Of a DNA stretch of 64,000 nt, positions 3,085 to 34,701 are shown one piece after another. Position 1 is the stretch's first letter. Each line of letters begins with the position of its first letter. The stretch lies in assembly GCA_964057225.1 (NCBI GenBank), contig OZ059899.1:12400001-12464000 (forward strand), given 5' to 3'. This DNA comes from Auanema rhodensis. Taxonomy: Eukaryota > Animalia > Nematoda. A model generated the notes under the pieces. The model was given only the letters and a program-made list of their open reading frames with translations, was not told the origin of the DNA and made no database searches. Both the position numbers and the translations under genes were made by a program.

Positions 3085-3164
3085 CTTTTATTATATAAAA
3101 CATTTTGATATATACGAAGGGTCGATCGGGATCATTTGAGCATCAAGAGTTTCAACAGACAACA

Positions 3165-3246
3165 GGTGAGATGGCCGAGCGGTCTAAGGCGCTGGTTTAA
3201 GGCACCAGTCTCTTCGGAGGCGTGGGTTCGAATCCCACTCTCATCA
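3165..3246 (+). tRNA. tRNA-Leu(AAG), first copy (representative)
   Basis: Cloverleaf: acceptor GGTGAGA/TCTCATC plus discriminator A; D arm GCC-GAGCGGTCTAA-GGC; anticodon stem CTGGT/ACCAG with loop TT-AAG-GC; long variable arm CTC-TTCG-GAG; T arm GTGGG-TTCGAAT-CCCAC; TTTT terminator 6 nt downstream. Confidence 0.98.
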
Positions 3247-3580
3247 GAATCCTTTTATTATATAAAATATTTTGTTATCTACGAAGGGTCGACAAGAACC
3301 ATTTGAGCATCAAGAGTTTCAACTGACAACAGGTGAGATGGCCGAGCGGTCTAAGGCGCTGGTTTAAGGCACCAGTCTCTTCGGAGGCGTGGGTTCGAAT
3401 CCCACTCTCATCAGAGTCCTTTTATTATATAAAACATTTTGATATCTACGAAGGGTCGACAAGAACCATTTGAGCATCAAGAGTTTCAACAGACAACAGG
3501 TGAGATGGCCGAGCGGTCTAAGGCGCTGGTTTAAGGCACCAGTCTCTTCGGAGGCGTGGGTTCGAATCCCACTCTCATCA
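3165..3580 (+). tRNA. tRNA-Leu(AAG) block 1, 3 copies
   Basis: Starts at 3165, 3332, 3499. Confidence 0.96.
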
Positions 3581-3599
3581 GAATCCTTTTATTATATAA

Positions 3600-4438
3600 C
3601 GTTCCGTTATGCTCCTGCGTCGATAATATAAACCATTGTAGTTTATACCATGACGCGAATAGTATTCCTTGGTGTAGCGGTAAGAATACAGAGCATAAGG
3701 TCAATCATAAGATAAAAGAGAGAAAGATTTATTGACATGAAACTACAACAATAATATACAAAGATAAAGATACATTACAATAAGATAAATAAAAGTATAG
3801 AGACTAAACTACAAGCCGTCCATGAGCTTGCTAAGAGGCGAACTCCCGACCAAGGGAACGAGGGAAGGCGGAGCCATTCCTCGGTCCTCTGGTCGTCTGG
3901 CTCTAACCCTTCAGCTACATACAGTCCTGTGCGAAATAGTTGGGACACTCACTAGAAACCCTTGTACCTTCTCAGACAAACTACAAAAATTCAGAAAAAA
4001 TATATTTTGGGTGTTAAAAAACGATAATGAATTCAGAAAAAATCTTCAAAATTTTAAAAATCATGTTGAAAAGTATTTTCTGAAGTCTTGAATCTATGCC
4101 ATAGGAAAAACTTGGTTATTGATCGAGCTCTGTGCTCAGAATGATTTAAAGATATTTTTAATAAATTAACTTGTTTCTAATCTCAAATTTTGTTATATTA
4201 AGAAGGATTATTCAAAATAGTCAAAAAACACTATTTTTCCTTATAAATTTAGAAATCTCATTGAAATCAGTTTTCATTATATTAACATATATTTTGACTG
4301 AATATAAACTAAACGCAAAATGTTTGAAATTAAAAAAAAAATTTTTTTTGTAGTTTGAAGGGGAATTCTGGGGCCTCTAACATAGGGGTGTCCCAACTAT
4401 TTCGCACAGGACTGTATATGGGGAGTCCGAATAGACCG
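3600..4438. mobile_element. Unclassified 344-bp insertion element, copy 1 (with nested MITE)
   Basis: Interrupts the spacer with ATAA duplicated on both sides; CGTTCCGTT...AATAGACCG termini. Confidence 0.75.
3922..4414. mobile_element. Tc1/mariner-type MITE (493 bp), copy 1
   Basis: Perfect 27-bp TIR CAGTCCTGTGCGAAATAGTTGGGACAC; TA target duplication confirmed against the empty sites near 24967 and 31501; AT-rich non-coding interior. Confidence 0.92.
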
Positions 4439-4508
4439 ATAAAATTTTTTGATATATACGAAGGGTCGACAAGAACCATTTGAGCATCAAGAGTTTCAAC
4501 TGACAACA

Positions 4509-7500
4509 GGTGAGATGGCCGAGCGGTCTAAGGCGCTGGTTTAAGGCACCAGTCTCTTCGGAGGCGTGGGTTCGAATCCCACTCTCATCAGAATCCTTTT
4601 ATTGTATAAAACATTTTGATATATACGAAGTGTCGACAAGAACCATTTGAGCATCAAGAGTTTCAACTGACAACAGGTGAGATGGCCGAGCGGTCTAAGG
4701 CGCTGGTTTAAGGCACCAGTCTCTTCGGAGGCGTGGGTTCGAATCCCACTCTCATCAGAATCCTTTTATTATATAAAACATTTTGATATATACGAAGGGT
4801 CGATCGGGATCATTTGAGCATCAAGAGTTTCAACAGACAACAGGTGAGATGGCCGAGCGGTCTAAGGCGCTGGTTTAAGGCACCAGTCTCTTCGGAGGCG
4901 TGGGTTCGAATCCCACTCTCATCAGAATCCTTTTATTATATAAAATATTTTGTTATCTACGAAGGGTCGACAAGAACCATTTGAGCATCAAGAGTTTCAA
5001 CTGACAACAGGTGAGATGGCCGAGCGGTCTAAGGCGCTGGTTTAAGGCACCAGTCTCTTCGGAGGCGTGGGTTCGAATCCCACTCTCATCAGAATCCTTT
5101 TATTATATAAAACATTTTGATATATACGAAGGGTCGACAAGAACCATTTAGGCATCAAGAGTTTCAACAGACAACAGGTGAGATGGCCGAGCGGTATAAG
5201 GCGCTGGTTTAAGGCACCAGTCTCTTCGGAGGCGTGGGTTCGAATCCCACTCTCATTTATTGTAAAAAACATTTTGATATATACGAAGGGTCGATCGGGA
5301 TCATTTGATTATCAAGAGTTTCAACTGACAACAGGTGAGATGGCCGAGCGGTCTAAGGCGCTGGTTTAAGGCACCAGTCTCTTCGGAGGCGTGGGTTCGA
5401 ATCCCACTCTCATCAGAATCCTTTTATTATATAAAACATTTTGTTATATACGAAGTGTCGACAAGAACCATTTGAGCTTTAAGAGTTTCAACAGACAACA
5501 GGTGAGATGGCCGAGCGGTCTAAGGCGCTGGTTTAAGGCACCAGTCTCTTCGGAGGCGTGGGTTCGAATCCCACTCTCATCAGAATCCTTTTATTGTATA
5601 AAACATTTTGATATATACGAAGGGTCGACAAGAACCATTTGAGCATCAAGAGTTTCAACAGACAACAGGTGAGATGGCCGAGCGGTCTAAGGCGCTGGTT
5701 TAAGGCACCAGTCTCTTCGGAGGCGTGGGTTCGAATCCCACTCTCATCAGAATCCTTTTATTATATAAAACATTTTGTTATATACGAAGTGTCGACAAGA
5801 ACCATTTGAGCATCAAGAGTTTCAACAGACAACAGGTGAGATGGCCGAGCGGTCTAAGGCGCTGGTTTAAGGCACCAGTCTCTTCGGAGGCGTGGGTTCG
5901 AATCCCACTCTCATCAGAATCCTTTTATTGTATAAAACATTTTGATATATACGAAGGGTCGACAAGAACCATTTGAGCATCAAGAGTTTCAACAGACAAC
6001 AGGTGAGATGGCCGAGCGGTCTAAGGCGCTGGTTTAAGGCACCAGTCTCTTCGGAGGCGTGGGTTCGAATCCCACTCTCATCAGAATCCTTTTATTGTAT
6101 AAAACATTTTGATATATACGAAGGGTCGACAAGAACCATTTGAGCATCAAGAGTTTCAACAGACAACAGGTGAGATGGCCGAGCGGTCTAAGGCGCTGGT
6201 TTAAGGCACCAGTCTCTTCGGAGGCGTGGGTTCGAATCCCACCCTCATCAGAATCCTTTTATTGTATAAAACATTTTGATATATACGAAGGGTCGATCGA
6301 GATCATTTGATTATCAAGAGTTTCAACAGATAACAGGTGAGATGGCCGAGCGGTCTAAGGCGCTGGTTTAAGGCACCAGTATCTTCGGAGGCGTGGGTTC
6401 GAATCCCACTCTCATCAGAATCCTTTTATTATATAAAACATTTTGATATATACGAAGGGTCGACAAGAACCATTTGAGCATCAAGAGTTTCAACAGACAA
6501 CAGGTGAGATGGCCGAGCGGTCTAAGGCGCTGGTTTAAGGCACCAGTCTCTTCGGAGGCGTGGGTTCGAATCCCACTCTCATCAGAATCCTTTTATTGTA
6601 TAAAACATTTTGATATATACGAAGGGTCGACAAGAACCATTTGAGCATCAAGAGTTTCAACAGACAACAGGTGAGATGGCCGAGCGGTCTAAGGCGCTGG
6701 TTTAAGGCACCAGTCTCTTCGGAGGCGTGGGTTCGAATCCCACCCTCATCAGAATCCTTTTATTGTATAAAACATTTTGATATATACGAAGGGTCGATCG
6801 AGATCATTTGATTATCAAGAGTTTCAACAGATAACAGGTGAGATGGCCGAGCGGTCTAAGGCGCTGGTTTAAGGCACCAGTATCTTCGGAGGCGTGGGTT
6901 CGAATCCCACTCTCATCAGAATCCTTTTATTATATAAAACATTTTGATATATACGAAGGGTCGACAAGAACCATTTGAGCATCAAGAGTTTCAACAGACA
7001 ACAGGTGAGATGGCCGAGCGGTCTAAGGCGCTGGTTTAAGGCACCAGTCTCTTCGGAGGCGTGGGTTCGAATCCCACTCTCATCAGAATCCTTTTATTGT
7101 ATAAAACATTTTGATATATACGAAGGGTCGACAAGAACCATTTGAGCTTTAAGAGTTTCAACAGACAACAGGTGAGATGGCCGAGCGGTCTAAGGCGCTG
7201 GTTTAAGGCACCAGTCTCTTCGGAGGCGTGGGTTCGAATCCCACTCTCATCAGAATCCTTTTATTGTATAAAACATTTTGATATATACGAAGGGTCGACA
7301 AGAACCATTTGAGCTTCAAGAGTTTCAACAGACAACAGGTGAGATGGCCGAGTGGTCTAAGGCGCTGGTTTAAGGCACCAGTCTCTTCGGAGGCGTGGGT
7401 TCGAATCCCACTCTCATCAGAATCCTTTTATTGTATAAAACATTTTGATATATACGAAGGGTCGACAAGAACCATTTGAGCATCAAGAGTTTCAACAGAC

Positions 7501-10500
7501 AACAGGTGAGATGGCCGAGCGGTCTAAGGCGCTGGTTTAAGGCACCAGTCTCTTCGGAGGCGTGGGTTCGAATCCCACTCTCATCAGAATCCTTTTATTA
7601 TATAAAACATTTTGTTATATACGAAGTGTCGACAAGAACCATTTGAGCATCAAGAGTTTCAACAGACAACAGGTGAGATGGCCGAGCGGTCTAAGGCGCT
7701 GGTTTAAGGCACCAGTCACTTCGGAGGCGTGGGTTCGAATCCCACTCTCATCAGAATCCTTTTATTGTATAAAACATTTTGATATATACGAAGGGTCGAC
7801 AAGAACCATTTGAGCATCAAGAGTTTCAACAGACAACAGGTGAGATGGCCGAGCGGTCTAAGGCGCTGGTTTAAGGCACCAGTCTCTTCGGAGGCGTGGG
7901 TTCGAATCCCACTCTCATCAGAATCCTTTTATTATATAAAACATTTTGTTATATACGAAGTGTCGACAAGAACCATTTGAGCATCAAGAGTTTCAACAGA
8001 CAACAGGTGAGATGGCCGAGCGGTCTAAGGCGCTGGTTTAAGGCACCAGTCTCTTCGGAGGCGTGGGTTCGAATCCCACTCTCATCAGAATCCTTTTATT
8101 GTATAAAACATTTTGATATATACGAAGGGTCGACAAGAACCATTTGAGCATCAAGAGTTTCAACAGACAACAGGTGAGATGGCCGAGCGGTCTAAGGCGC
8201 TGGTTTAAGGCACCAGTCTCTTCGGAGGCGTGGGTTCGAATCCCACTCTCATCAGAATCCTTTTATTGTATAAAACATTTTGATATATACGAAGGGTCGA
8301 CAAGAACCATTTGAGCTTTAAGAGTTTCAACAGACAACAGGTGAGATGGCCGAGCGGTCTAAGGCGCTGGTTTAAGGCACCAGTCTCTTCGGAGGCGTGG
8401 GTTCGAATCCCACTCTCATCAGAATCCTTTTATTGTATAAAACATTTTGATATATACGAAGGGTCGATCGAGATCATTTGATTATCAAGAGTTTCAACAG
8501 ATAACAGGTGAGATGGCCGAGCGGTCTAAGGCGCTGGTTTAAGGCACCAGTATCTTCGGAGGCGTGGGTTCGAATCCCACTCTCATCAGAATCCTTTTAT
8601 TATATAAAACATTTTGATATATACGAAGGGTCGACAAGAACCATTTGAGCATCAAGAGTTTCAACAGACAACAGGTGAGATGGCCGAGCGGTCTAAGGCG
8701 CTGGTTTAAGGCACCAGTCTCTTCGGAGGCGTGGGTTCGAATCCCACTCTCATCAGAATCCTTTTATTGTATAAAACATTTTGATATATACGAAGGGTCG
8801 ACAAGAACCATTTGAGCTTTAAGAGTTTCAACAGACAACAGGTGAGATGGCCGAGCGGTCTAAGGCGCTGGTTTAAGGCACCAGTCTCTTCGGAGGCGTG
8901 GGTTCGAATCCCACTCTCATCAGAATCCTTTTATTGTATAAAACATTTTGATATATACGAAGGGTCGACAAGAACCATTTGAGCTTCAAGAGTTTCAACA
9001 GACAACAGGTGAGATGGCCGAGTGGTCTAAGGCGCTGGTTTAAGGCACCAGTCTCTTCGGAGGCGTGGGTTCGAATCCCACTCTCATCAGAATCCTTTTA
9101 TTATATAAAACATTTTGATATATACGAAGGGTCGACAAGAACCATTTGAGCATCAAGAGTTTCAACAGACAACAGGTGAGATGGCCGAGCGGTCTAAGGC
9201 GCTGGTTTAAGGCACCAGTCTCTTCGGAGGCGTGGGTTCGAATCCCACTCTCATCAGAATCCTTTTATTGTATAAAACATTTTGATATATACGAAGGGTC
9301 GATCGGGATCATTTGATTATCAAGAGTTTCAACAGACAACAGGTGAGATGGCCGAGCGGTCTAAGGCGCTGGTTTAAGGCACCAGTCTCTTCGGAGGCGT
9401 GGGTTCGAATATCACTCTCATCAGAATCCTTTTATTATATAAAACATTTTGATATATACGAAGGGTCGACAAGAACCATTTGAGCATCAAGAGTTTCAAC
9501 TGACAACAGGTGAGATGGCCGAGCGGTCTAAGGCGCTGGTTTAAGGCACCAGTCTCTTCGGAGGCGTGGGTTCGAATCCCACTCTCATCAGAATCCTTTT
9601 ATTGTATAAAACATTTTGATATATACGAAGGGTCGACAAGAACCATTTGAGCTTTAAGAGTTTCAACAGACAACAGGTGAGATGGCCGAGCGGTCTAAGG
9701 CGCTGGTTTAAGGCACCAGTCTCTTCGGAGGCGTGGGTTCGAATCCCACTCTCATCAGAGTCCTTTTATTATATAAAACATTTTGATATCTACGAAGGGT
9801 CGACAAGAACCATTTGAGCATCAAGAGTTTCAACAGACAACAGGTGAGATGGCCGAGCGGTCTAAGGCGCTGGTTTAAGGCACCAGTCTCTTCGGAGGCG
9901 TGGGTTCGAATCCCACTCTCATCAGAATCCTTTTATTATATAAAACATTTTGATATATACGGAGGGTCGACAAGAACCATTTGAGCTTCAAGAGTTTCAA
10001 CAGACAACAGGTGAGATGGCCGAGTGGTCTAAGGCGCTGGTTTAAGGCACCAGTCTCTTCGGAGGCGTGGGTTCGAATCCCACTCTCATCAGAATCCTTT
10101 TATTGTATAAAACATTTTGATATATACGAAGGGTCGACAAGAACCATTTGAGCATCAAGAGTTTCAACAGACAACAGGTGAGATGGCCGAGCGGTCTAAG
10201 GCGCTGGTTTAAGGCACCAGTCTCTTCGGAGGCGTGGGTTCGAATCCCACTCTCATCAGAATCCTTTTATTATATAAAACATTTTGATATATACGGAGGG
10301 TCGACAAGAACCATTTGAGCTTCAAGAGTTTCAACAGACAACAGGTGAGATGGCCGAGTGGTCTAAGGCGCTGGTTTAAGGCACCAGTCTCTTCGGAGGC
10401 GTGGGTTCGAATCCCACTCTCATCAGAATCCTTTTATTGTATAAAACATTTTGATATATACGAAGGGTCGATCGAGATCATTTGATTATCAAGAGTTTCA

Positions 10501-13500
10501 ACAGACAACAGGTGAGATGGCCGAGCGGTCTAAGGCGCTGGTTTAAGGCACCAGTCTCTTCGGAGGCGTGGGTTCGAATCCCACTCTCATCAGAATCCTT
10601 TTATTATATAAAACATTTTGATATATACGAAGGGTCGACAAGAACCATTTGAGCATCAAGAGTTTCAACAGACAACAGGTGAGATGGCCGAGCGGTCTAA
10701 GGCGCTGGTTTAAGGCACCAGTCTCTTCGGAGGCGTGGGTTCGAATCCCACTCTCATCAGAATCCTTTTATTGTATAAAACATTTTGATATATACGAAGG
10801 GTCGACAAGAACCATTTGAGCATCAAGAGTTTCAACAGACAACAGGTGAGATGGCCGAGCGGTCTAAGGCGCTGGTTTAAGGCACCAGTCTCTTCGGAGG
10901 CGTGGGTTCGAATCCCACTCTCATCAGAATCCTTTTATTATATAAAACATTTTGATATATACGAAGGGTCGACAAGAACCATTTGAGCTTCAAGAGTTTC
11001 AACAGACAACAGGTGAGATGGCCGAGTGGTCTAAGGCGCTGGTTTAAGGCACCAGTCTCTTCGGAGGCGTGGGTTCGAATCCCACTCTCATCAGAATCCT
11101 TTTATTATATAAAACATTTTGATATATACGAAGGGTCGACAAGAACCATTTGAGCATCAAGAGTTTCAACAGACAACAGGTGAGATGGCCGAGCGGTCTA
11201 AGGCGCTGGTTTAAGGCACCAGTCTCTTCGGAGGCGTGGGTTCGAATCCCACTCTCATCAGAATCCTTTTATTGTATAAAACATTTTGATATATACGAAG
11301 GGTCGACAAGAACCATTTGAGCATCAAGAGTTTCAACAGACAACAGGTGAGATGGCCGAGCGGTCTAAGGCGCTGGTTTAAGGCACCAGTCTCTTCGGAG
11401 GCGTGGGTTCGAATCCCACTCTCATCAGAATCCTTTTATTATATAAAACATTTTGTTATATACGAAGTGTCGACAAGAACCATTTGAGCATCAAGAGTTT
11501 CAACAGACAACAGGTGAGATGGCCGAGCGGTCTAAGGCGCTGGTTTAAGGCACCAGTCTCTTCGGAGGCGTGGGTTCGAATCCCACTCTCATCAGAATCC
11601 TTTTATTGTATAAAACATTTTGATATATACGAAGGGTCGACAAGAACCATTTGAGCATCAAGAGTTTCAACAGACAACAGGTGAGATGGCCGAGCGGTCT
11701 AAGGCGCTGGTTTAAGGCACCAGTCTCTTCGGAGGCGTGGGTTCGAATCCCACTCTCATCAGAATCCTTTTATTGTATAAAACATTTTGATATATACGAA
11801 GGGTCGACAAGAACCATTTGAGCATCAAGAGTTTCAACAGACAACAGGTGAGATGGCCGAGCGGTCTAAGGCGCTGGTTTAAGGCACCAGTCTCTTCGGA
11901 GGCGTGGGTTCGAATCCCACTCTCATCAGAATCCTTTTATTGTATAAAACATTTTGATATATACGAAGGGTCGATCGAGATCATTTGATTATCAAGAGTT
12001 TCAACAGATAACAGGTGAGATGGCCGAGCGGTCTAAGGCGCTGGTTTAAGGCACCAGTCTCTTCGGAGGCGTGGGTTCGAATCCCACTCTCATCAGAATC
12101 CTTTTATTATATAAAACATTTTGATATATACGAAGGGTCGACAAGAACCATTTGAGCATCAAGAGTTTCAACAGACAACAGGTGAGATGGCCGAGCGGTC
12201 TAAGGCGCTGGTTTAAGGCACCAGTCTCTTCGGAGGCGTGGGTTCGAATCCCACTCTCATCAGAATCCTTTTATTGTATAAAACATTTTGATATATACGA
12301 AGGGTCGACAAGAACCATTTGAGCATCAAGAGTTTCAACAGACAACAGGTGAGATGGCCGAGCGGTCTAAGGCGCTGGTTTAAGGCACCAGTCTCTTCGG
12401 AGGCGTGGGTTCGAATCCCACTCTCATCAGAATCCTTTTATTATATAAAACATTTTGATATATACGAAGGGTCGACAAGAACCATTTGAGCTTCAAGAGT
12501 TTCAACAGACAACAGGTGAGATGGCCGAGTGGTCTAAGGCGCTGGTTTAAGGCACCAGTCTCTTCGGAGGCGTGGGTTCGAATCCCACTCTCATCAGAAT
12601 CCTTTTATTATATAAAACATTTTGATATATACGAAGGGTCGACAAGAACCATTTGAGCATCAAGAGTTTCAACAGACAACAGGTGAGATGGCCGAGCGGT
12701 CTAAGGCGCTGGTTTAAGGCACCAGTCTCTTCGGAGGCGTGGGTTCGAATCCCACTCTCATCAGAATCCTTTTATTATATAAAACATTTTGTTATATACG
12801 AAGTGTCGACAAGAACCATTTGAGCATCAAGAGTTTCAACAGACAACAGGTGAGATGGCCGAGCGGTCTAAGGCGCTGGTTTAAGGCACCAGTCTCTTCG
12901 GAGGCGTGGGTTCGAATCCCACTCTCATCAGAATCCTTTTATTGTATAAAACATTTTGATATATACGAAGGGTCGACAAGAACCATTTGAGCATCAAGAG
13001 TTTCAACAGACAACAGGTGAGATGGCCGAGCGGTCTAAGGCGCTGGTTTAAGGCACCAGTCTCTTCGGAGGCGTGGGTTCGAATCCCACTCTCATCAGAA
13101 TCCTTTTATTGTATAAAACATTTTGATATATACGAAGGGTCGACAAGAACCATTTGAGCATCAAGAGTTTCAACAGACAACAGGTGAGATGGCCGAGCGG
13201 TCTAAGGCGCTGGTTTAAGGCACCAGTCTCTTCGGAGGCGTGGGTTCGAATCCCACTCTCATCAGAATCCTTTTATTGTATAAAACATTTTGATATATAC
13301 GAAGGGTCGATCGAGATCATTTGATTATCAAGAGTTTCAACAGATAACAGGTGAGATGGCCGAGCGGTCTAAGGCGCTGGTTTAAGGCACCAGTCTCTTC
13401 GGAGGCGTGGGTTCGAATCCCACTCTCATCAGAATCCTTTTATTATATAAAACATTTTGATATATACGAAGGGTCGACAAGAACCATTTGAGCATCAAGA

Positions 13501-16500
13501 GTTTCAACAGACAACAGGTGAGATGGCCGAGCGGTCTAAGGCGCTGGTTTAAGGCACCAGTCTCTTCGGAGGCGTGGGTTCGAATCCCACTCTCATCAGA
13601 ATCCTTTTATTGTATAAAACATTTTGATATATACGAAGGGTCGACAAGAACCATTTGAGCATCAAGAGTTTCAACAGACAACAGGTGAGATGGCCGAGCG
13701 GTCTAAGGCGCTGGTTTAAGGCACCAGTCTCTTCGGAGGCGTGGGTTCGAATCCCACTCTCATCAGAATCCTTTTATTATATAAAACATTTTGATATATA
13801 CGAAGGGTCGACAAGAACCATTTGAGCTTCAAGAGTTTCAACAGACAACAGGTGAGATGGCCGAGTGGTCTAAGGCGCTGGTTTAAGGCACCAGTCTCTT
13901 CGGAGGCGTGGGTTCGAATCCCACTCTCATCAGAATCCTTTTATTATATAAAACATTTTGATATATACGAAGGGTCGACAAGAACCATTTGAGCATCAAG
14001 AGTTTCAACAGACAACAGGTGAGATGGCCGAGCGGTCTAAGGCGCTGGTTTAAGGCACCAGTCTCTTCGGAGGCGTGGGTTCGAATCCCACTCTCATCAG
14101 AATCCTTTTATTATATAAAACATTTTGATATATACGAAGGGTCGACAAGAACCATTTGAGCTTCAAGAGTTTCAACAGACAACAGGTGAGATGGCCGAGT
14201 GGTCTAAGGCGCTGGTTTAAGGCACCAGTCTCTTCGGAGGCGTGGGTTCGAATCCCACTCTCATCAGAATCCTTTTATTATATAAAACATTTTGATATAT
14301 ACGAAGGGTCGACAAGAACCATTTGAGCATCAAGAGTTTCAACAGACAACAGGTGAGATGGCCGAGCGGTCTAAGGCGCTGGTTTAAGGCACCAGTCTCT
14401 TCGGAGGCGTGGGTTCGAATCCCACTCTCATCAGAATCCTTTTATTGTATAAAACATTTTGATATATACGAAGGGTCGACAAGAACCATTTGAGCATCAA
14501 GAGTTTCAACAGACAACAGGTGAGATGGCCGAGCGGTCTAAGGCGCTGGTTTAAGGCACCAGTCTCTTCGGAGGCGTGGGTTCGAATCCCACTCTCATCA
14601 GAATCCTTTTATTATATAAAACATTTTGTTATATACGAAGTGTCGACAAGAACCATTTGAGCATCAAGAGTTTCAACAGACAACAGGTGAGATGGCCGAG
14701 CGGTCTAAGGCGCTGGTTTAAGGCACCAGTCTCTTCGGAGGCGTGGGTTCGAATCCCACTCTCATCAGAATCCTTTTATTGTATAAAACATTTTGATATA
14801 TACGAAGGGTCGACAAGAACCATTTGAGCATCAAGAGTTTCAACAGACAACAGGTGAGATGGCCGAGCGGTCTAAGGCGCTGGTTTAAGGCACCAGTCTC
14901 TTCGGAGGCGTGGGTTCGAATCCCACTCTCATCAGAATCCTTTTATTGTATAAAACATTTTGATATATACGAAGGGTCGATCGAGATCATTTGATTATCA
15001 AGAGTTTCAACAGATAACAGGTGAGATGGCCGAGCGGTCTAAGGCGCTGGTTTAAGGCACCAGTATCTTCGGAGGCGTGGGTTCGAATCCCACTCTCATC
15101 AGAATCCTTTTATTATATAAAACATTTTGATATATACGAAGGGTCGACAAGAACCATTTGAGCATCAAGAGTTTCAACAGACAACAGGTGAGATGGCCGA
15201 GCGGTCTAAGGCGCTGGTTTAAGGCACCAGTCTCTTCGGAGGCGTGGGTTCGAATCCCACTCTCATCAGAATCCTTTTATTGTATAAAACATTTTGATAT
15301 ATACGAAGGGTCGACAAGAACCATTTGAGCTTTAAGAGTTTCAACAGACAACAGGTGAGATGGCCGAGCGGTCTAAGGCGCTGGTTTAAGGCACCAGTCT
15401 CTTCGGAGGCGTGGGTTCGAATCCCACTCTCATCAGAATCCTTTTATTGTATAAAACATTTTGATATATACGAAGGGTCGACAAGAACCATTTGAGCTTC
15501 AAGAGTTTCAACAGACAACAGGTGAGATGGCCGAGTGGTCTAAGGCGCTGGTTTAAGGCACCAGTCTCTTCGGAGGCGTGGGTTCGAATCCCACTCTCAT
15601 CAGAATCCTTTTATTGTATAAAACATTTTGATATATACGAAGGGTCGACAAGAACCATTTGAGCATCAAGAGTTTCAACAGACAACAGGTGAGATGGCCG
15701 AGCGGTCTAAGGCGCTGGTTTAAGGCACCAGTCTCTTCGGAGGCGTGGGTTCGAATCCCACTCTCATCAGAATCCTTTTATTGTATAAAACATTTTGATA
15801 TATACGAAGGGTCGACAAGAACCATTTGAGCATCAAGAGTTTCAACAGACAACAGGTGAGATGGCCGAGCGGTCTAAGGCGCTGGTTTAAGGCACCAGTC
15901 TCTTCGGAGGCGTGGGTTCGAATCCCACTCTCATCAGAATCCTTTTATTGTATAAAACATTTTGATATATACGAAGGGTCGATCGAGATCATTTGATTAT
16001 CAAGAGTTTCAACAGATAACAGGTGAGATGGCCGAGCGGTCTAAGGCGCTGGTTTAAGGCACCAGTATCTTCGGAGGCGTGGGTTCGAATCCCACTCTCA
16101 TCAGAATCCTTTTATTATATAAAACATTTTGATATATACGAAGGGTCGACAAGAACCATTTGAGCATCAAGAGTTTCAACAGACAACAGGTGAGATGGCC
16201 GAGCGGTCTAAGGCGCTGGTTTAAGGCACCAGTCTCTTCGGAGGCGTGGGTTCGAATCCCACTCTCATCAGAATCCTTTTATTGTATAAAACATTTTGAT
16301 ATATACGAAGGGTCGACAAGAACCATTTGAGCTTTAAGAGTTTCAACAGACAACAGGTGAGATGGCCGAGCGGTCTAAGGCGCTGGTTTAAGGCACCAGT
16401 CTCTTCGGAGGCGTGGGTTCGAATCCCACTCTCATCAGAATCCTTTTATTGTATAAAACATTTTGATATATACGAAGGGTCGACAAGAACCATTTGAGCT

Positions 16501-19500
16501 TCAAGAGTTTCAACAGACAACAGGTGAGATGGCCGAGTGGTCTAAGGCGCTGGTTTAAGGCACCAGTCTCTTCGGAGGCGTGGGTTCGAATCCCACTCTC
16601 ATCAGAATCCTTTTATTATATAAAACATTTTGATATATACGAAGGGTCGACAAGAACCATTTGAGCATCAAGAGTTTCAACAGACAACAGGTGAGATGGC
16701 CGAGCGGTCTAAGGCGCTGGTTTAAGGCACCAGTCTCTTCGGAGGCGTGGGTTCGAATCCCACTCTCATCAGAATCCTTTTATTGTATAAAACATTTTGA
16801 TATATACGAAGGGTCGATCGGGATCATTTGAGCATCAAGAGTTTCAACAGACAACAGGTGAGATGGCCGAGCGGTCTAAGGCGCTGGTTTAAGGCACCAG
16901 TCTCTTCGGAGGCGTGGGTTCGAATCCCACTCTCATCAGAATCCTTTTATTATATAAAACATTTTGATATATACGGAGGGTCGACAAGAACCATTTGAGC
17001 TTCAAGAGTTTCAACAGACAACAGGTGAGATGGCCGAGTGGTCTAAGGCGCTGGTTTAAGGCACCAGTCTCTTCGGAGGCGTGGGTTCGAATCCCACTCT
17101 CATCAGAATCCTTTTATTGTATAAAACATTTTGATATATACGAAGGGTCGACAAGAACCATTTGAGCATCAAGAGTTTCAACAGACAACAGGTGAGATGG
17201 CCGAGCGGTCTAAGGCGCTGGTTTAAGGCACCAGTCTCTTCGGAGGCGTGGGTTCGAATCCCACTCTCATCAGAATCCTTTTATTATATAAAACATTTTG
17301 ATATATACGAAGGGTCGACAAGAACCATTTGAGCATCAAGAGTTTCAACAGACAACAGGTGAGATGGCCGAGCGGTCTAAGGCGCTGGTTTAAGGCACCA
17401 GTCTCTTCGGAGGCGTGGGTTCGAATCCCACTCTCATCAGAATCCTTTTATTGTATAAAACATTTTGATATATACGAAGGGTCGACAAGAACCATTTGAG
17501 CATCAAGAGTTTCAACAGACAACAGGTGAGATGGCCGAGCGGTCTAAGGCGCTGGTTTAAGGCACCAGTCTCTTCGGAGGCGTGGGTTCGAATCCCACTC
17601 TCATCAGAATCCTTTTATTATATAAAACATTTTGATATATACGAAGGGTCGACAAGAACCATTTGAGCTTCAAGAGTTTCAACAGACAACAGGTGAGATG
17701 GCCGAGTGGTCTAAGGCGCTGGTTTAAGGCACCAGTCTCTTCGGAGGCGTGGGTTCGAATCCCACTCTCATCAGAATCCTTTTATTATATAAAACATTTT
17801 GATATATACGAAGGGTCGACAAGAACCATTTGAGCATCAAGAGTTTCAACAGACAACAGGTGAGATGGCCGAGCGGTCTAAGGCGCTGGTTTAAGGCACC
17901 AGTCTCTTCGGAGGCGTGGGTTCGAATCCCACTCTCATCAGAATCCTTTTATTGTATAAAACATTTTGATATATACGAAGGGTCGACAAGAACCATTTGA
18001 GCATCAAGAGTTTCAACAGACAACAGGTGAGATGGCCGAGCGGTCTAAGGCGCTGGTTTAAGGCACCAGTCTCTTCGGAGGCGTGGGTTCGAATCCCACT
18101 CTCATCAGAATCCTTTTATTATATAAAACATTTTGTTATATACGAAGTGTCGACAAGAACCATTTGAGCATCAAGAGTTTCAACAGACAACAGGTGAGAT
18201 GGCCGAGCGGTCTAAGGCGCTGGTTTAAGGCACCAGTCTCTTCGGAGGCGTGGGTTCGAATCCCACTCTCATCAGAATCCTTTTATTGTATAAAACATTT
18301 TGATATATACGAAGGGTCGACAAGAACCATTTGAGCATCAAGAGTTTCAACAGACAACAGGTGAGATGGCCGAGCGGTCTAAGGCGCTGGTTTAAGGCAC
18401 CAGTCTCTTCGGAGGCGTGGGTTCGAATCCCACTCTCATCAGAATCCTTTTATTGTATAAAACATTTTGATATATACGAAGGGTCGACAAGAACCATTTG
18501 AGCATCAAGAGTTTCAACAGACAACAGGTGAGATGGCCGAGCGGTCTAAGGCGCTGGTTTAAGGCACCAGTCTCTTCGGAGGCGTGGGTTCGAATCCCAC
18601 TCTCATCAGAATCCTTTTATTGTATAAAACATTTTGATATATACGAAGGGTCGATCGAGATCATTTGATTATCAAGAGTTTCAACAGATAACAGGTGAGA
18701 TGGCCGAGCGGTCTAAGGCGCTGGTTTAAGGCACCAGTCTCTTCGGAGGCGTGGGTTCGAATCCCACTCTCATCAGAATCCTTTTATTATATAAAACATT
18801 TTGATATATACGAAGGGTCGACAAGAACCATTTGAGCATCAAGAGTTTCAACAGACAACAGGTGAGATGGCCGAGCGGTCTAAGGCGCTGGTTTAAGGCA
18901 CCAGTCTCTTCGGAGGCGTGGGTTCGAATCCCACTCTCATCAGAATCCTTTTATTGTATAAAACATTTTGATATATACGAAGGGTCGACAAGAACCATTT
19001 GAGCATCAAGAGTTTCAACAGACAACAGGTGAGATGGCCGAGCGGTCTAAGGCGCTGGTTTAAGGCACCAGTCTCTTCGGAGGCGTGGGTTCGAATCCCA
19101 CTCTCATCAGAATCCTTTTATTATATAAAACATTTTGATATATACGAAGGGTCGACAAGAACCATTTGAGCATCAAGAGTTTCAACAGACAACAGGTGAG
19201 ATGGCCGAGCGGTCTAAGGCGCTGGTTTAAGGCACCAGTCTCTTCGGAGGCGTGGGTTCGAATCCCACTCTCATCAGAATCCTTTTATTATATAAAACAT
19301 TTTGATATATACGAAGGGTCGACAAGAACCATTTGAGCATCAAGAGTTTCAACAGACAACAGGTGAGATGGCCGAGCGGTCTAAGGCGCTGGTTTAAGGC
19401 ACCAGTCTCTTCGGAGGCGTGGGTTCGAATCCCACTCTCATCAGAATCCTTTTATTGTATAAAACATTTTGATATATACGAAGGGTCGACAAGAACCATT

Positions 19501-22449
19501 TGAGCATCAAGAGTTTCAACAGACAACAGGTGAGATGGCCGAGCGGTCTAAGGCGCTGGTTTAAGGCACCAGTCTCTTCGGAGGCGTGGGTTCGAATCCC
19601 ACTCTCATCAGAATCCTTTTATTATATAAAACATTTTGTTATATACGAAGTGTCGACAAGAACCATTTGAGCATCAAGAGTTTCAACAGACAACAGGTGA
19701 GATGGCCGAGCGGTCTAAGGCGCTGGTTTAAGGCACCAGTCTCTTCGGAGGCGTGGGTTCGAATCCCACTCTCATCAGAATCCTTTTATTGTATAAAACA
19801 TTTTGATATATACGAAGGGTCGACAAGAACCATTTGAGCATCAAGAGTTTCAACAGACAACAGGTGAGATGGCCGAGCGGTCTAAGGCGCTGGTTTAAGG
19901 CACCAGTCTCTTCGGAGGCGTGGGTTCGAATCCCACTCTCATCAGAATCCTTTTATTGTATAAAACATTTTGATATATACGAAGGGTCGACAAGAACCAT
20001 TTGAGCATCAAGAGTTTCAACAGACAACAGGTGAGATGGCCGAGCGGTCTAAGGCGCTGGTTTAAGGCACCAGTCTCTTCGGAGGCGTGGGTTCGAATCC
20101 CACTCTCATCAGAATCCTTTTATTGTATAAAACATTTTGATATATACGAAGGGTCGATCGAGATCATTTGATTATCAAGAGTTTCAACAGATAACAGGTG
20201 AGATGGCCGAGCGGTCTAAGGCGCTGGTTTAAGGCACCAGTATCTTCGGAGGCGTGGGTTCGAATCCCACTCTCATCAGAATCCTTTTATTATATAAAAC
20301 ATTTTGATATATACGAAGGGTCGACAAGAACCATTTGAGCATCAAGAGTTTCAACAGACAACAGGTGAGATGGCCGAGCGGTCTAAGGCGCTGGTTTAAG
20401 GCACCAGTCTCTTCGGAGGCGTGGGTTCGAATCCCACTCTCATCAGAATCCTTTTATTGTATAAAACATTTTGATATATACGAAGGGTCGACAAGAACCA
20501 TTTGAGCTTTAAGAGTTTCAACAGACAACAGGTGAGATGGCCGAGCGGTCTAAGGCGCTGGTTTAAGGCACCAGTCTCTTCGGAGGCGTGGGTTCGAATC
20601 CCACTCTCATCAGAATCCTTTTATTGTATAAAACATTTTGATATATACGAAGGGTCGACAAGAACCATTTGAGCTTCAAGAGTTTCAACAGACAACAGGT
20701 GAGATGGCCGAGTGGTCTAAGGCGCTGGTTTAAGGCACCAGTCTCTTCGGAGGCGTGGGTTCGAATCCCACTCTCATCAGAATCCTTTTATTGTATAAAA
20801 CATTTTGATATATACGAAGGGTCGACAAGAACCATTTGAGCATCAAGAGTTTCAACAGACAACAGGTGAGATGGCCGAGCGGTCTAAGGCGCTGGTTTAA
20901 GGCACCAGTCTCTTCGGAGGCGTGGGTTCGAATCCCACTCTCATCAGAATCCTTTTATTGTATAAAACATTTTGATATATACGAAGGGTCGACAAGAACC
21001 ATTTGAGCATCAAGAGTTTCAACAGACAACAGGTGAGATGGCCGAGCGGTCTAAGGCGCTGGTTTAAGGCACCAGTCTCTTCGGAGGCGTGGGTTCGAAT
21101 CCCACTCTCATCAGAATCCTTTTATTGTATAAAACATTTTGATATATACGAAGGGTCGATCGAGATCATTTGATTATCAAGAGTTTCAACAGATAACAGG
21201 TGAGATGGCCGAGCGGTCTAAGGCACTGGTTTAAGGCACCAGTATCTTCGGAGGCGTGGGTTCGAATCCCACTCTCATCAGAATCCTTTTATTATATAAA
21301 ACATTTTGATATATACGAAGGGTCGACAAGAACCATTTGAGCATCAAGAGTTTCAACAGACAACAGGTGAGATGGCCGAGCGGTCTAAGGCGCTGGTTTA
21401 AGGCACCAGTCTCTTCGGAGGCGTGGGTTCGAATCCCACTCTCATCAGAATCCTTTTATTGTATAAAACATTTTGATATATACGAAGGGTCGACAAGAAC
21501 CATTTGAGCTTTAAGAGTTTCAACAGACAACAGGTGAGATGGCCGAGTGGTCTAAGGCGCTGGTTTAAGGCACCAGTCTCTTCGGAGGCGTGGGTTCGAA
21601 TCCCACTCTCATCAGAATCCTTTTATTGTATAAAACATTTTGATATATACGAAGGGTCGACAAGAACCATTTGAGCTTCAAGAGTTTCAACAGACAACAG
21701 GTGAGATGGCCGAGTGGTCTAAGGCGCTGGTTTAAGGCACCAGTCTCTTCGGAGGCGTGGGTTCGAATCCCACTCTCATCAGAATCCTTTTATTATATAA
21801 AACATTTTGATATATACGAAGGGTCGACAAGAACCATTTGAGCATCAAGAGTTTCAACAGACAACAGGTGAGATGGCCGAGCGGTCTAAGGCGCTGGTTT
21901 AAGGCACCAGTCTCTTCGGAGGCGTGGGTTCGAATCCCACTCTCATCAGAATCCTTTTATTGTATAAAACATTTTGATATATACGAAGGGTCGATCGGGA
22001 TCATTTGATTATCAAGAGTTTCAACAGACAACAGGTGAGATGGCCGAGCGGTCTAAGGCGCTGGTTTAAGGCACCAGTCTCTTCGGAGGCGTGGGTTCGA
22101 ATATCACTCTCATCAGAATCCTTTTATTATATAAAACATTTTGATATATACGAAGGGTCGACAAGAACCATTTGAGCATCAAGAGTTTCAACTGACAACA
22201 GGTGAGATGGCCGAGCGGTCTAAGGCGCTGGTTTAAGGCACCAGTCTCTTTGGAGGCGTGGGTTCGAATCCCACTCTCATCAGAGTCCTTTTATTATATA
22301 AAACATTTTGATATCTACGAAGGGTCGACAAGAACCATTTGAGCATCAAGAGTTTCAACAGACAACAGGTGAGATGGCCGAGCGGTCTAAGGCGCTGGTT
22401 TAAGGCACCAGTCTCTTCGGAGGCGTGGGTTCGAATCCCACTCTCATCA
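4509..22449 (+). tRNA. tRNA-Leu(AAG) block 2, 108 copies
   Basis: 5 copies at 4509-5177 (the last with a 10-bp 3' deletion), then 103 copies from 5334 to 22368 at 167-bp spacing. Confidence 0.96.
5177..5257 (+). pseudogene. Damaged tRNA-Leu copy
   Basis: D-loop C>A change plus a 10-bp deletion that removes the 3' end of the acceptor stem and part of the terminator (unit length 157). Confidence 0.7.
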
Positions 22450-22468
22450 GAATCCTTTTATTATATAA

Positions 22469-23306
22469 CGTTCCGTTATGCTCCTGCGTCGATAATATAA
22501 ACCATTGTAGTTTATACCATGACGCGAATAGTATTCCTTGGTGTAGCGGTAAGAATACAGAGCATAAGGTCAATCATAAGATAAAAGAGAGAAAGATTTA
22601 TTGACATGAAACTACAACAATAATATACAAAGATAAAGATACATTACAATAAGATAAATAAAAGTATAGAGACTAAACTACAAGCCGTCCATGAGCTTGC
22701 TAAGAGGCGAACTCCCGACCAAGGGAACGAGGGAAGGCGGAGCCATTCCTCGGTCCTCTGGTCGTCTGGCTCTAACCCTTCAGCTACATACAGTCCTGTG
22801 CGAAATAGTTGGGACACTCACTAGAAACCCTTGTACCTTCTCAGACAAACTACAAAAATTCAGAAAAAATATATTTTGGGTGTTAAAAAACGATAATGAA
22901 TTCAGAAAAAATCTTCAAAATTTTAAAAATCATGTTGAAAAGTATTTTCTGAAATCTTGAATCTATGCCATAGGAAAAACTTGGTTATTGATCGAGCTCT
23001 GTGCTCAGAATGATTTAAAGATATTTTTAATAAATTAACTTGTTTCTAATCTCAAATTTTGTTATATTAAGAAGGATTATTCAAAATAGTCAAAAAACAC
23101 TATTTTTCCTTATAAATTTAGAAATCTCATTGAAATCAGTTTTCATTATATTAACATATATTTTGACTGAATATAAACTAAACGCAAAATGTTTGAAATT
23201 AAAAAAAAATTTTTTTTGTAGTTTGAAGGGGAATTCTGGGGCCTCTAACATAGGGGTGTCCCAACTATTTCGCACAGGACTGTATATGGGGAGTCCGAAT
23301 AGACCG
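22469..23306. mobile_element. Unclassified insertion element, copy 2 (with nested MITE)
   Basis: Near-identical to copy 1, same spacer position. Confidence 0.75.
22791..23282. mobile_element. Tc1/mariner-type MITE (492 bp), copy 2
   Basis: Same 27-bp TIRs and TA flanks. Confidence 0.92.
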
Positions 23307-23376
23307 ATAAAATTTTTTGATATATACGAAGGGTCGACAAGAACCATTTGAGCATCAAGAGTTTCAACTGACAACA

Positions 23377-24627: not shown

Positions 24628-24646
24628 GAATCCTTTTATTACATAA

Positions 24647-24990: not shown

Positions 24991-25060
24991 ATAAAATATT
25001 TTGATATATACGAAGGGTCGACAAGAACCATTTGAGCATCAAGAGTTTCAACAGACAACA

Positions 25061-25643: not shown

Positions 25644-25662
25644 GAATCCTTTTATTATATAA

Positions 25663-26500: not shown

Positions 26501-26570
26501 ATAAAATTTTTTGATATATACGAAGGGTCGACAAGAACCATTTGAGCATCAAGAGTTTCAACTGACAACA

Positions 26571-31161: not shown

Positions 31162-31180
31162 GAATCCTTTTATTACATAA

Positions 31181-31524: not shown

Positions 31525-31594
31525 ATAAAATATTTTGATATATACGAAGGGTCGACAAGAACCATTTGAGCATCAAGAGTTTCAACAGACAACA

Positions 31595-34682: not shown

Positions 34683-34701
34683 GAATCCTTTTATTATATA
34701 A

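What the first reader, a model, noticed from the sequence alone, without database searches (positions are those of the whole stretch)
3600..4438. Unclassified 344-bp element resident in the tRNA array, with 4-bp ATAA duplication and CG...CG ends
Seen: the spacer ttttattat-ATAA-aacatttt becomes ATAA-[CGTTCCGTTATGCTCC ... GGAGTCCGAATAGACCG]-ATAA in five full copies (3600, 22469, 24647, 25663, 31181) and one stub (34702), always 20 bp 3' of a tRNA. The ends form only a weak inverted repeat (CGTTCCGTTATG-CTCC versus CGGTCTATTCGGACTCC); there is no poly-A tail, no convincing ORF and no TG...CA ends. It fits no transposon class I can name. Inference: one insertion of a non-autonomous element later amplified with the array, or an element that targets tRNA 3' flanks.
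Basis: partly seen in the sequence, partly recalled or inferred. Interest (0 to 1): 0.75.

Follow-up and report, generated by a model that had tools for sequence, protein, structure and literature searches.

The report
Solo LTRs in tRNA gene array
The "unclassifiable" 344-bp element is the leftover end-repeat (solo LTR) of a 12-kb virus-like retrotransposon of a roundworm; every independent copy of this family I could check sits in a tandem array of tRNA or 5S RNA genes, a habit so far described in the reviews I read only for yeasts and slime moulds.

Summary
Five copies plus a stub share exact ends, an ATAA duplication and a position 19 nt after a tRNA-Leu(AAG). Three of them are 838-839 bp because a 493-bp TA-flanked mariner-type MITE is nested inside.

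The element can be classified. Elsewhere in this 180.9-Mb genome (probably Auanema rhodense) the same 344/345 bp occurs as direct terminal repeats, with 0-1 mismatch per pair. These flank a tRNA-Gln primer site, a polypurine tract and one 2977-codon frame: gag, gB-like env, protease, RT, RNase H, integrase. That gag-env-pol Ty3/gypsy layout is already published for nematodes. The window copies are therefore solo LTRs. Their ends are CG...CG, not TG...CA, and the duplication is 4 bp.

Seven private substitutions shared by all seven array copies show one old insertion that was later multiplied with the array.

All 13 independent insertions I could resolve lie in tandem arrays of Pol III genes: 12 in tRNA arrays of nine anticodon types and one in a 5S array. 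The control MITE family gave 0 of 25. That favours directed integration but does not prove it.

Other windows of this scan had already noted this LTR guild.

The parts
3600..4438 (-). Solo LTR copy 1 (344 bp of LTR interrupted by a nested MITE). The element's sense strand is the window's minus strand: U3 starts at 4438 and U5 ends at 3600.
   Evidence: The same 344/345 bp forms direct terminal repeats around PBS, ORF and PPT elsewhere.
3596..3599 (.). Left copy of the 4-bp target-site duplication ATAA. The right copy is at 4439-4442.
   Evidence: Nine other insertions of the family also have perfect 4-bp duplications.
4439..4442 (.). Right copy of the 4-bp target-site duplication ATAA.
3922..4414 (.). 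Nested 493-bp Tc1/mariner-type MITE: TA duplication and 27-bp perfect terminal inverted repeats starting CAGTCC. It lies in U3, 22 bp from the LTR's sense 5' end. The same insertion is at 22791-23282 and 25985-26476.
   Evidence: The family is dispersed in the genome.
3665..3684 (-). U5 box. The plus strand reads like tRNA-Gln nt 3-22 (18 of 20 identical, 12 contiguous), so the element's RNA is complementary to the primer tRNA's 5'/D arm. This explains the 'A-box-like' motif.
   Evidence: using the tRNA-Gln gene sequence found.
3728..3733 (-). AATAAA polyadenylation signal of the LTR (sense nt 211-216 of 344; TTTATT on the plus strand).
   Evidence: Sequence motif only.
22469..23306 (-). Solo LTR copy with nested MITE (838 bp).
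24647..24990 (-). Solo LTR copy without MITE (344 bp).
25663..26500 (-). Solo LTR copy with nested MITE (838 bp).
31181..31524 (-). Solo LTR copy without MITE (344 bp).
34702..34738 (-). LTR stub: LTR nt 1-24, one base, LTR nt 159-170. It forms the joint where the tRNA array turns into an inverted mini-array.
3085..34701 (+). Host tandem array of tRNA-Leu(AAG) genes, 167-bp period. Its spacer is the integration target.
34739..35705 (-). Inverted continuation of the array (5 tRNA-Leu(AAG) genes on the minus strand).

Best explanation
Each 344-bp unit is a solo long terminal repeat.

Shown: a roughly 12-kb Ty3/gypsy-type endogenous retrovirus-like element once integrated into the spacer of one tRNA-Leu(AAG) unit, 19 nt after the gene and antisense to it. 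Its layout is LTR, tRNA-Gln primer site, gag, class III gB-like env, protease, RT, RNase H, integrase, polypurine tract, LTR. Its integrase made a 4-bp staggered cut, giving the ATAA duplication.

Inferred, the standard route: recombination between the two LTRs removed the interior and left a solo LTR.

Shown by shared private substitutions, flank variants and the shared nested MITE: this single relic was then copied at least seven times as the array expanded and was rearranged. A mariner-type MITE entered one copy in between, and one copy was broken at an inversion joint (the stub). The relic itself is inert.

The CG...CG ends are the family's normal, non-canonical LTR termini. The tRNA-like motif is the U5 box that pairs with the primer tRNA-Gln.

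At family level, every independent insertion examined lies in a tandem array of Pol III-transcribed genes (tRNA or 5S). The most likely reason (inferred, about 0.65) is that the integration complex is tethered to Pol III machinery or to chromatin specific to these arrays. This would work like Ty1 or the Dictyostelium elements but without a fixed distance to the gene.
For: LTR identity:
- The same 344/345 bp occurs in direct pairs about 11.7 kb apart at C4:15092614-15104695 and C6:11395463-11407542, and in pairs 3.5-4 kb apart elsewhere. Pairs differ by 0-1 mismatch.
- Next to one LTR lies TGGAGGTTCCACC, 13 nt complementary to the 3' end of this genome's tRNA-Gln plus CCA. Next to the other lies GAAAAAGGGCA.
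- Ten insertions (nine elsewhere plus the window's) have perfect 4-bp duplications, all different.

Coding content:
- One 2977-codon frame carries Retrotrans_gag, Monjiviricetes_fusion/gB (64.5 bits against a cut-off of 27), aspartyl protease, RVT_1, RNase H, Integrase_H2C2 and rve.
- The best match among solved structures is the yeast Ty3 Gag-Pol, E 5.7e-104.
- Gag-env-pol gB-type Ty3/gypsy elements are published for Nematoda (PMC13524379).

Single origin in the window: seven substitutions are private to all seven array copies, one further substitution separates the short from the long copies, and the site and duplication are identical.

Array preference:
- 12 of 13 independent events lie in arrays of tRNA Leu-AAG, Leu-TAG, Ser-AGA, Lys-CTT, Lys-TTT, Asn-GTT, Thr-TGT, Met-CAT and Gly-TCC, or inside a tRNA-Tyr-like gene within a Leu-TAG array. 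These are spread over six chromosomes.
- The thirteenth lies in a 529-bp-period 5S rRNA array.
- The control family, the nested MITE's relatives, gave 0 of 25 loci with a tRNA within 1.5 kb.
- tRNA genes number about 19,554 (preprint) to about 28,000 rough candidates. By my estimate that is only a few percent of 181 Mb.
- About two thirds of this genome is said to be eliminated DNA, most of it tandem repeats (preprint 10.64898/2026.08.27.747507). A merely 'tolerated' element would be expected there.
Against: - The ends are CG...CG rather than the TG...CA usual for LTRs.
- Only 13 independent events out of roughly 450 candidate LTR copies could be examined. They are the best-scoring hits, not a random sample.
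- A random-sample control of the genome could not be run.
- Positions within the array units are scattered: 22 to 284 nt upstream, three inside genes, both orientations. No Ty3-like precision supports a defined tether.
- Every target is also a redundant tandem array, so Pol III specificity and tolerance in redundant DNA are confounded.
- A degenerate 79-85% relative with the same CG start lies at a locus with no tRNA within 1.5 kb (L061).
- Two solitary tRNA-Gln genes carry no copy nearby.
- Host identity rests on matching assembly size and on sub-threshold SL1 matches, not on a marker gene.
Confidence: 0.85

Rival explanations
1. Passive accumulation. The family integrates more or less at random, and copies survive and multiply only in redundant tandem arrays, where they do no harm. 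The link with tRNA and 5S arrays then reflects selection and array amplification, not targeting. The window copies would still be solo LTRs.
For: - All targets are redundant tandem arrays.
- Positions and orientations within units are scattered.
- Arrays demonstrably amplify resident copies: seven from one insertion here, and duplicated pairs on C5 and C6.
- Earlier follow-ups on other arrays of this genome reached this view (s1-418494, s1-419004).
- A degenerate relative sits outside any array.
Against: - The LTR pairs of nine elements differ by 0-1 of 344 nt, so they are very young and selection has had little time.
- tRNA and 5S arrays are a few percent of the genome, yet they took 13 of 13 events.
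- Most of the eliminated two thirds of this germline genome is reported to be tandem repeats, presumably equally tolerant, yet none of the 13 events lies there.
- Another mobile family gave 0 of 25 near tRNAs.
- Even if 90% of non-array insertions were lethal, 13 of 13 in arrays would be expected with a probability of about 4e-8 (my arithmetic).
Confidence: 0.25
2. Repeated independent site-specific insertions. An element that recognises the 3' flank of tRNA-Leu inserted separately into each of the array units.
For: Every window copy is at the same spacer position with the same ATAA duplication.
Against: - All seven copies share seven substitutions absent from the active family, including two in the terminal six bases.
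- Five share one nested MITE at the same TA.
- Flank variants travel with the copies.
- Other insertions of the family use different positions and different 4-bp duplications.
Confidence: 0.03
3. A non-autonomous DNA transposon: a MITE, a Dada-like element aimed at tRNA-Leu, or a Helitron, with weak terminal inverted repeats.
For: - Short terminal inverted repeat and a short duplication.
- No ORF in the 344 bp.
- Dada transposons are known to target tRNA-Leu genes in animals (PMC3706591).
Against: - The unit occurs as direct repeats around an interior with PBS, PPT and gag-env-pol.
- Dada makes 6-7-bp duplications and inserts at one site inside the gene; here the duplication is 4 bp and the site lies in the spacer.
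- There are no Helitron-type ends or A|T insertion site.
Confidence: 0.01
4. A tRNA-derived SINE or a captured genomic fragment, suggested by the A-box-like motif.
For: The motif TGGTGTAGCGGT resembles a tRNA A box.
Against: - No Rfam family matches the element.
- There is no poly-A or simple-repeat tail.
- The motif lies on the antisense strand of the LTR and matches tRNA-Gln nt 3-22, the same tRNA that the PBS pairs with. It is therefore a primer-pairing box.
- The LTR context is as above.
Confidence: 0.01

Closest known systems
Nematode gag-env-pol Ty3/gypsy endogenous retroviruses with gB-type (class III) envelope (Sacco et al. 2022, J Gen Virol 103:1739, cited but not read; eLife 2026, PMC13524379)
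   Same: - Ty3/gypsy pol with the order PR-RT-RH-IN.
- An envelope glycoprotein of herpes gB / mononegavirus G type placed between gag and pol.
- LTRs and a tRNA primer site.
- Multicopy, young insertions in a nematode genome.
   Different: - Clade membership was not tested by phylogeny.
- The eLife text contains no occurrence of 'integration site', 'insertion site' or 'target site'. Confinement to tRNA and 5S gene arrays and the CG...CG termini are therefore, as far as I could see, not described there.
- Here gag, env and pol lie in a single uninterrupted frame.
Pol III-gene-targeting retrotransposons: yeast Ty1 and Ty3, S. japonicus Tj1, Dictyostelium DGLT-A, Skipper-2, TRE5 and TRE3 (PMC5911963, PMC5006619, PMC6101501)
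   Same: Insertions are tied to Pol III-transcribed genes of different kinds (many tRNA isotypes and 5S) rather than to a DNA sequence. The targets are multicopy and presumably safe.
   Different: - The host is an animal with a 181-Mb germline genome, not a compact microbial genome.
- The targets are giant tandem arrays.
- There is no fixed distance or orientation relative to the gene, and some insertions split the gene.
- No interaction with TFIIIB, TFIIIC or Pol III has been shown.
Ordinary solo LTRs of LTR retrotransposons
   Same: A single LTR flanked by the target-site duplication, left after LTR-LTR recombination. It is older than the active copies (3% diverged).
   Different: - Termini are CG...CG instead of TG...CA.
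- The relic was multiplied at least sevenfold by expansion of its host array.
Dada DNA transposons targeting tRNA-Leu and snRNA genes (PMC3706591)
   Same: A mobile element living in multicopy small-RNA genes of animals, including tRNA-Leu arrays.
   Different: Dada has a DDE transposase, 6-7-bp duplications and one fixed site inside the gene. Here the element is an LTR retroelement with 4-bp duplications and variable sites.

Membership tests
Solo LTR of an LTR retrotransposon | The same sequence occurs as direct terminal repeats around an interior that begins with a tRNA primer-binding site and ends with a polypurine tract. | tested here: met
   - Pairs on C4, C6, C3, C1 and C5.
- PBS of 13 nt complementary to tRNA-Gln plus CCA.
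- PPT GAAAAAGGGCA.
Solo LTR of an LTR retrotransposon | Flanked by a short (4-6 bp) target-site duplication. | tested here: met
   ATAA in the window. Nine other perfect 4-bp duplications: ACGC, ATTC, ATAG, TAAG, GAGG, GTTG, TTGG, CTGG, ATCC.
Solo LTR of an LTR retrotransposon | Termini 5'-TG...CA-3'. | tested here: not met
   All 23 copies outside this array start CGTTCC and end GGAACG. This is a variant terminus, not grounds for exclusion given the other features.
Solo LTR of an LTR retrotransposon | The two LTRs of one insertion are near-identical. | tested here: met
   0-1 mismatch in 344/345 nt in nine pairs.
Ty3/gypsy (Metaviridae) | Pol domain order protease, RT, RNase H, integrase. | tested here: met
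   Pfam positions 1751-1840, 2094-2253, 2316-2449 and 2559-2728 in the 2977-aa frame.
Ty3/gypsy (Metaviridae) | RT-RH-IN sequence closest to Ty3/gypsy rather than to copia, Bel/Pao or retroviruses. | tested here: inconclusive
   The best solved-structure match is the Ty3 Gag-Pol at 5.7e-104, against retroviral RTs at 1e-34. There are no Bel/Pao-specific Pfam domains. No phylogeny was made.
Nematode gag-env-pol gB-type ERVs | A membrane glycoprotein of class III fusion type encoded between gag and pol. | tested here: met
   - PF24664 at 64.5 bits (cut-off 27), and PF00606 at 38.8 bits (below its cut-off of 43).
- Weak matches to gB chains in the PDB, E 1e-3.
- A hydrophobic signal-like segment before and a transmembrane segment after the ectodomain.
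- The fold itself was not predicted.
Nematode gag-env-pol gB-type ERVs | Falls in a published nematode clade of the POL tree. | not tested
   No reference sequences were at hand, and the supplement of PMC13524379 is not held.
Pol III-gene-targeting retrotransposons | Independent insertions associated with Pol III-transcribed genes of several kinds, far above expectation. | tested here: met
   13 of 13 events: 12 in tRNA arrays and one in a 5S array. The control family gave 0 of 25. The sample is small and consists of best-scoring hits only.
Pol III-gene-targeting retrotransposons | A characteristic distance and/or orientation relative to the Pol III gene. | tested here: not met
   Insertions lie 22, 40, 58, 70, 85, 87, 92, 106, 180 and 284 nt upstream. 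Two are at the same A-box spot and one is in a T loop. Both orientations occur.
Pol III-gene-targeting retrotransposons | Targeting depends on an interaction with TFIIIB, TFIIIC or Pol III, and is seen in new integrations. | not testable with these tools
   Needs experiments or population data.
Dada DNA transposons | 6-7-bp duplication at one fixed site inside the small-RNA gene, plus a DDE transposase. | tested here: not met
   The duplication is 4 bp, the sites are in spacers and variable, and the interior is gag-env-pol.
Tc1/mariner-type MITE (the nested element only) | TA duplication, terminal inverted repeats, no coding capacity. | tested here: met
   TA on both sides, 27-bp perfect TIRs, 493 bp. 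The parent transposase was not sought.

The most novel reading that the evidence does not exclude
An envelope-bearing Ty3/gypsy retrovirus-like lineage of an animal has evolved directed integration into Pol III-transcribed gene arrays (tRNA and 5S). This would be convergent with yeast Ty1/Ty3 and the Dictyostelium elements. It may be linked to the lineage's unusual CG...CG LTR ends and its multi-site pairing with tRNA-Gln. [quoted passage not shown]
Probability: 0.5. Interest if true: 0.8.

Novelty: new variant of a known kind. Interest (0 to 1): 0.55.

Why it matters
The 344-bp relic is ordinary in itself. It settles a puzzle (CG...CG ends, no ORF, a tRNA-like motif) and shows how a tRNA array copies its passengers.

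The parent family matters more. The reviews I consulted describe Pol III-gene targeting by retrotransposons only for yeasts and dictyostelid amoebae with compact genomes (PMC5911963, PMC5006619). A young, envelope-carrying family in a nematode whose examined insertions all lie in tRNA or 5S arrays would extend the phenomenon to animals. It would also give a natural system for asking two questions: how an integrase finds Pol III chromatin, and whether germline-restricted DNA acts as a transposon refuge in a species with massive programmed DNA elimination.

The published assembly makes a full census directly feasible.

Tried and rejected
- Rfam scan of the element and its flanks found only the tRNAs plus chance-level hits, so no SINE or RNA family.
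- MITE, Dada and Helitron readings were rejected on the LTR context, the 4-bp duplication and the ends.
A second LTR search returned coordinates but no loci for the same reason. I did not try to obtain those letters by another route.
- The one apparent exception to the tRNA link (C3:12.8 Mb) had no tandem repeat by TRF. Rfam showed it to be a 5S rRNA array.
- I looked for a positional rule relative to the Pol III gene and found none.
- Two solitary tRNA-Gln loci carry no LTR, which is too few to interpret.
- The supplement of PMC13524379 and the Sacco et al. paper could not be read.
- The costly protein searches, structure prediction and fold search were not used. Pfam, PDB sequence matches and the literature already placed the polyprotein.

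Full report
**What is in the window**

ARAGORN finds 175 tRNA-Leu(AAG) genes. They stand in a 167-bp tandem array from about 3085 to 34701, followed by five inverted units up to 35705.

The right end is at 4438, 23306, 24990, 26500 and 31524.

The alignment shows two 344-bp copies and three copies of 838-839 bp. The extra 492-493 bp is a nested element with a TA duplication and 27-bp perfect terminal inverted repeats, that is, a Tc1/mariner-type MITE.

Each copy starts 19 nt after a tRNA and is flanked by ATAA on both sides. An empty unit has a single ATAA at that point.

**What the 344 bp is**

The window is G000:C7:12400001-12464000 of a 180,911,798-base genome. A search of that genome with the 344 bp gave about 450 candidates. 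The 40 that were scored are full-length and 96-100% identical, on six large contigs.

Outside this array every copy starts CGTTCC and ends GGAACG, so the window copies carry two substitutions in their last six bases.

The flanks fall into three classes:
- host DNA;
- a constant sequence ending ...GGTGGAACCTCCA on one side;
- a constant sequence starting TGCCCTTTTTC on the other side.

Copies come in direct pairs about 11.7 kb apart (C4:15092614-15104695, C6:11395463-11407542, C3:12807670-12819755), in pairs 3.5-4 kb apart, and once 28 kb apart. Pairs differ by 0-1 mismatch in 344/345 nt. Each pair, and one further solo copy, is bounded by a perfect 4-bp duplication, different at each site.

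Read on the coding strand, the interior begins with TGGAGGTTCCACC. These 13 nt are complementary to the 3' end plus CCA of the tRNA-Gln genes of this genome. The interior ends with the polypurine run GAAAAAGGGCA.

The unit is therefore a long terminal repeat, and the window copies are solo LTRs. Their sense strand is the window's minus strand. In that orientation the LTR carries AATAAA at nt 211 and, in U5, a 20-nt box complementary to nt 3-22 of tRNA-Gln (18 of 20). This box is the 'A-box-like' motif.

**The parent element**

Both full-length copies examined hold one uninterrupted frame of 2977-2982 codons. The two copies are 99.1% identical over 12 kb.

Pfam places the following along the frame:
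- a retrotransposon gag domain at about 463-580;
- a viral class III fusion glycoprotein at about 1340-1550 (PF24664, 64.5 bits against a cut-off of 27; herpes gB ectodomain below its cut-off);
- aspartyl protease at 1751-1840;
- RT at 2094-2253;
- RNase H at 2316-2449;
- integrase zinc and core domains at 2559-2728.

The translation shows a hydrophobic signal-like stretch before the glycoprotein part and a membrane anchor after it.

Among solved structures the pol part is closest to the yeast Ty3 Gag-Pol (5.7e-104). The env part matches herpesvirus gB weakly.

This gag-env-pol order with a gB-type envelope is already described for Ty3/gypsy elements of Nematoda, Bryozoa and Platyhelminthes (PMC13524379, which cites Sacco et al. 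2022). The architecture is therefore known.

The copies of 3.5-4 kb are internal-deletion derivatives. Two that I compared share one breakpoint, joining nt 3038 to nt 11545 of the full-length locus as I numbered it. They sit at different sites with their own duplications, so they moved as non-autonomous copies.

**History of the window copies**

All seven copies of this array (five in the window, two just upstream) share seven substitutions that none of eight active-family LTRs has. One further substitution separates the two short copies from the five MITE-bearing ones. The flank variants follow the same split.

The order of events was therefore:
1. One integration took place.
2. Reduction to a solo LTR followed (inferred).
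3. The relic was duplicated with the array.
4. The MITE entered one copy.
5. Further duplication followed.

The relic is 3% diverged from the active family, whose own LTR pairs are identical, so it is comparatively old. The stub at 34702 keeps LTR nt 1-24 and nt 159-170 and abuts the inverted array. An LTR copy thus lies at that rearrangement joint.

**Where the family lives**

Collapsing duplicates by flank and duplication, the loci give 13 independent insertions:

| Event | Target |
|---|---|
| This window | tRNA-Leu(AAG) array |
| Two events | tRNA-Ser(AGA) arrays, one of them in the T loop of a unit |
| Two events | tRNA-Lys(CTT) arrays |
| One event | tRNA-Lys(TTT) array |
| One event | tRNA-Asn(GTT) array |
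| One event | tRNA-Leu(TAG) array |
| One event | A-box region of a tRNA-Tyr-like gene (my reading of the flank) within a Leu(TAG) array |
| One event | The same A-box position of what reads as a further tRNA gene, beside a tRNA-Thr(TGT) array |
| One event | tRNA-Met(CAT) array |
| One event | Next to two tRNA-Gly(TCC) genes |
| One event (C3:12.8 Mb) | No tRNA nearby |

Rfam shows that the last site is a 529-bp-period array of 5S rRNA genes, with the insertion 58 nt upstream of a unit. All 13 events are thus in tandem arrays of Pol III-transcribed genes.

As a control, 25 loci of the nested MITE's family outside this array have no tRNA within 1.5 kb.

The genome holds roughly 28,000 tRNA candidates by the tool's rough count. 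By my estimate from the array periods, that is a few percent of the DNA.

**Host**

Full-length but sub-threshold SL1 spliced-leader genes form a large array on C3. A 2026 preprint reports a 180.9-Mb germline assembly of that nematode with seven chromosome scaffolds and 19,554 tRNA genes. It also reports elimination of about two thirds of the genome from the soma. The eliminated DNA is mostly satellite but includes 5S, tRNA and U2 arrays (10.64898/2026.08.27.747507).

The assembly size matches G000 to the digit given. I take the identification as probable, but I did not verify it with a marker.

If it holds, tolerant repeat DNA makes up most of the genome. That makes 13 of 13 in Pol III arrays hard to explain by tolerance alone.

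**Mechanism and limits**

Shown: retroviral-type integration with a 4-bp stagger; LTR identity; single origin and array-borne amplification of the window copies; the association of the family with Pol III gene arrays in the sample examined.

Inferred: formation of the solo LTR by LTR-LTR recombination; tethering of the integration complex to Pol III machinery or to array chromatin.

Several points weigh against a precise tether. Positions are scattered from 22 to 284 nt upstream, three insertions are inside genes, and both orientations occur. The sample is small and consists of best-scoring hits. All targets are also redundant arrays. A degenerate relative with the same CG start lies away from any tRNA.

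**Comparison with what is known**

The relic is a solo LTR of a known kind of element.

Two things appear not to be described in the papers I could read. One is the family's confinement to tRNA and 5S arrays in an animal: the reviews on Pol III targeting treat only yeasts and Dictyostelium, and the eLife survey does not discuss integration sites. The other is the CG...CG termini.

Other windows of this scan had already noted the same guild of CG-ended, tRNA-Gln-primed LTR elements in tRNA arrays, and the env-in-frame copy about 30 kb upstream of this window. Their follow-ups judged targeting unproven from single arrays. The cross-array tally and the 5S case are what this report adds.

Noticed in passing
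window 3922-4414, 22791-23282, 25985-26476: Nested 492-493-bp Tc1/mariner-type MITE with a TA duplication and 27-bp perfect TIRs. It is a rare deletion variant: most genomic relatives carry about 200 bp more between its nt 166 and 167. Near-identical copies exist only in this array, on C3:14.0 Mb and on C4:10.86 Mb.
   Followed up: partly
L019 and L024 (G000:C3:12806170-12821255): A full-length copy of the element sits in a tandem array of 5S rRNA genes (529-bp period) with the duplication TTGG, 58 nt upstream of a 5S unit.
   Followed up: yes
L003:766-916 and L003:3074-3224 (G000:C6:11375433-11378776): A second, related LTR family lies in the same tRNA-Ser(AGA) array as two copies in opposite orientation. 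It is 75-78% identical in U5 and has the same CGTTCCGTTATGCTC terminus, the same tRNA-Gln PBS and its own version of the D-arm box.
   Followed up: partly
L061 (G000:C3:13524119-13527453): At a locus with no tRNA within 1.5 kb lies a degenerate 79-85% relative of the element: integrase end, PPT, and an LTR that starts CGTTCC, carries a relative of the nested MITE (the hit that fetched this locus) and lacks its last bases. Beside it is another LTR end reading ...ACA followed by the tRNA-Gln PBS, that is, a canonical CA terminus.
   Followed up: partly
L038:222-1412 (G000:C4:15094721-15095911): The first ~397 codons of the 2977-codon frame contain no Met codon, yet stay open. Between the 5' LTR and the frame lies a leader of about 1.76 kb. 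The true start is unclear.
   Followed up: no
L033 and L034 (G000:C1:8254237-8262000; C5:9405000-9414999): Non-autonomous 3.5-4-kb deletion derivatives share one breakpoint (locus nt 3038 joined to 11545). They have transposed into tRNA-Asn and tRNA-Lys(CTT) arrays. The Lys(CTT) copy was then duplicated with a 4361-bp higher-order unit.
   Followed up: partly
L007, L021/L022 (G000:C3:17931629; C4:15092614-15104695): Two independent insertions split different tRNA genes at the same A-box position, after CAGTGG and after CAGTTG.
   Followed up: no
window 34702-35705: The direct tRNA-Leu array ends in an LTR stub and continues as five inverted units. The last unit is truncated at 35705, next to unique DNA.
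   Followed up: partly
window 36718-41747, minus strand: Exons of a CAD-type pyrimidine synthesis gene (carbamoyl-phosphate synthase and aspartate carbamoyltransferase domains) begin about 1 kb from the end of the array. Further right lie fragments of ABC-transporter and helicase genes.
   Followed up: no
G000:C3:6741531-7099372: A very large tandem array (252/504-bp spacing) of full-length SL1-like spliced-leader RNA genes scores 54-62 bits, below Rfam's 75-bit cut-off. None of the scored LTR hits falls in it.
   Followed up: no
G000:C7:12358247-12370110: A pair of LTRs of the active family, 11.5 kb apart, lies 30-42 kb before the window. It is presumably a full-length copy, but I could not fetch it.
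   Followed up: no
window 1-3084: Non-array sequence precedes the array, ending in an (AG)n microsatellite at 2962-3021. tRNA-Leu(AAG) units with the same solo LTR reappear further upstream (C7:12387315-12393983), so the array is interrupted here.
   Followed up: no
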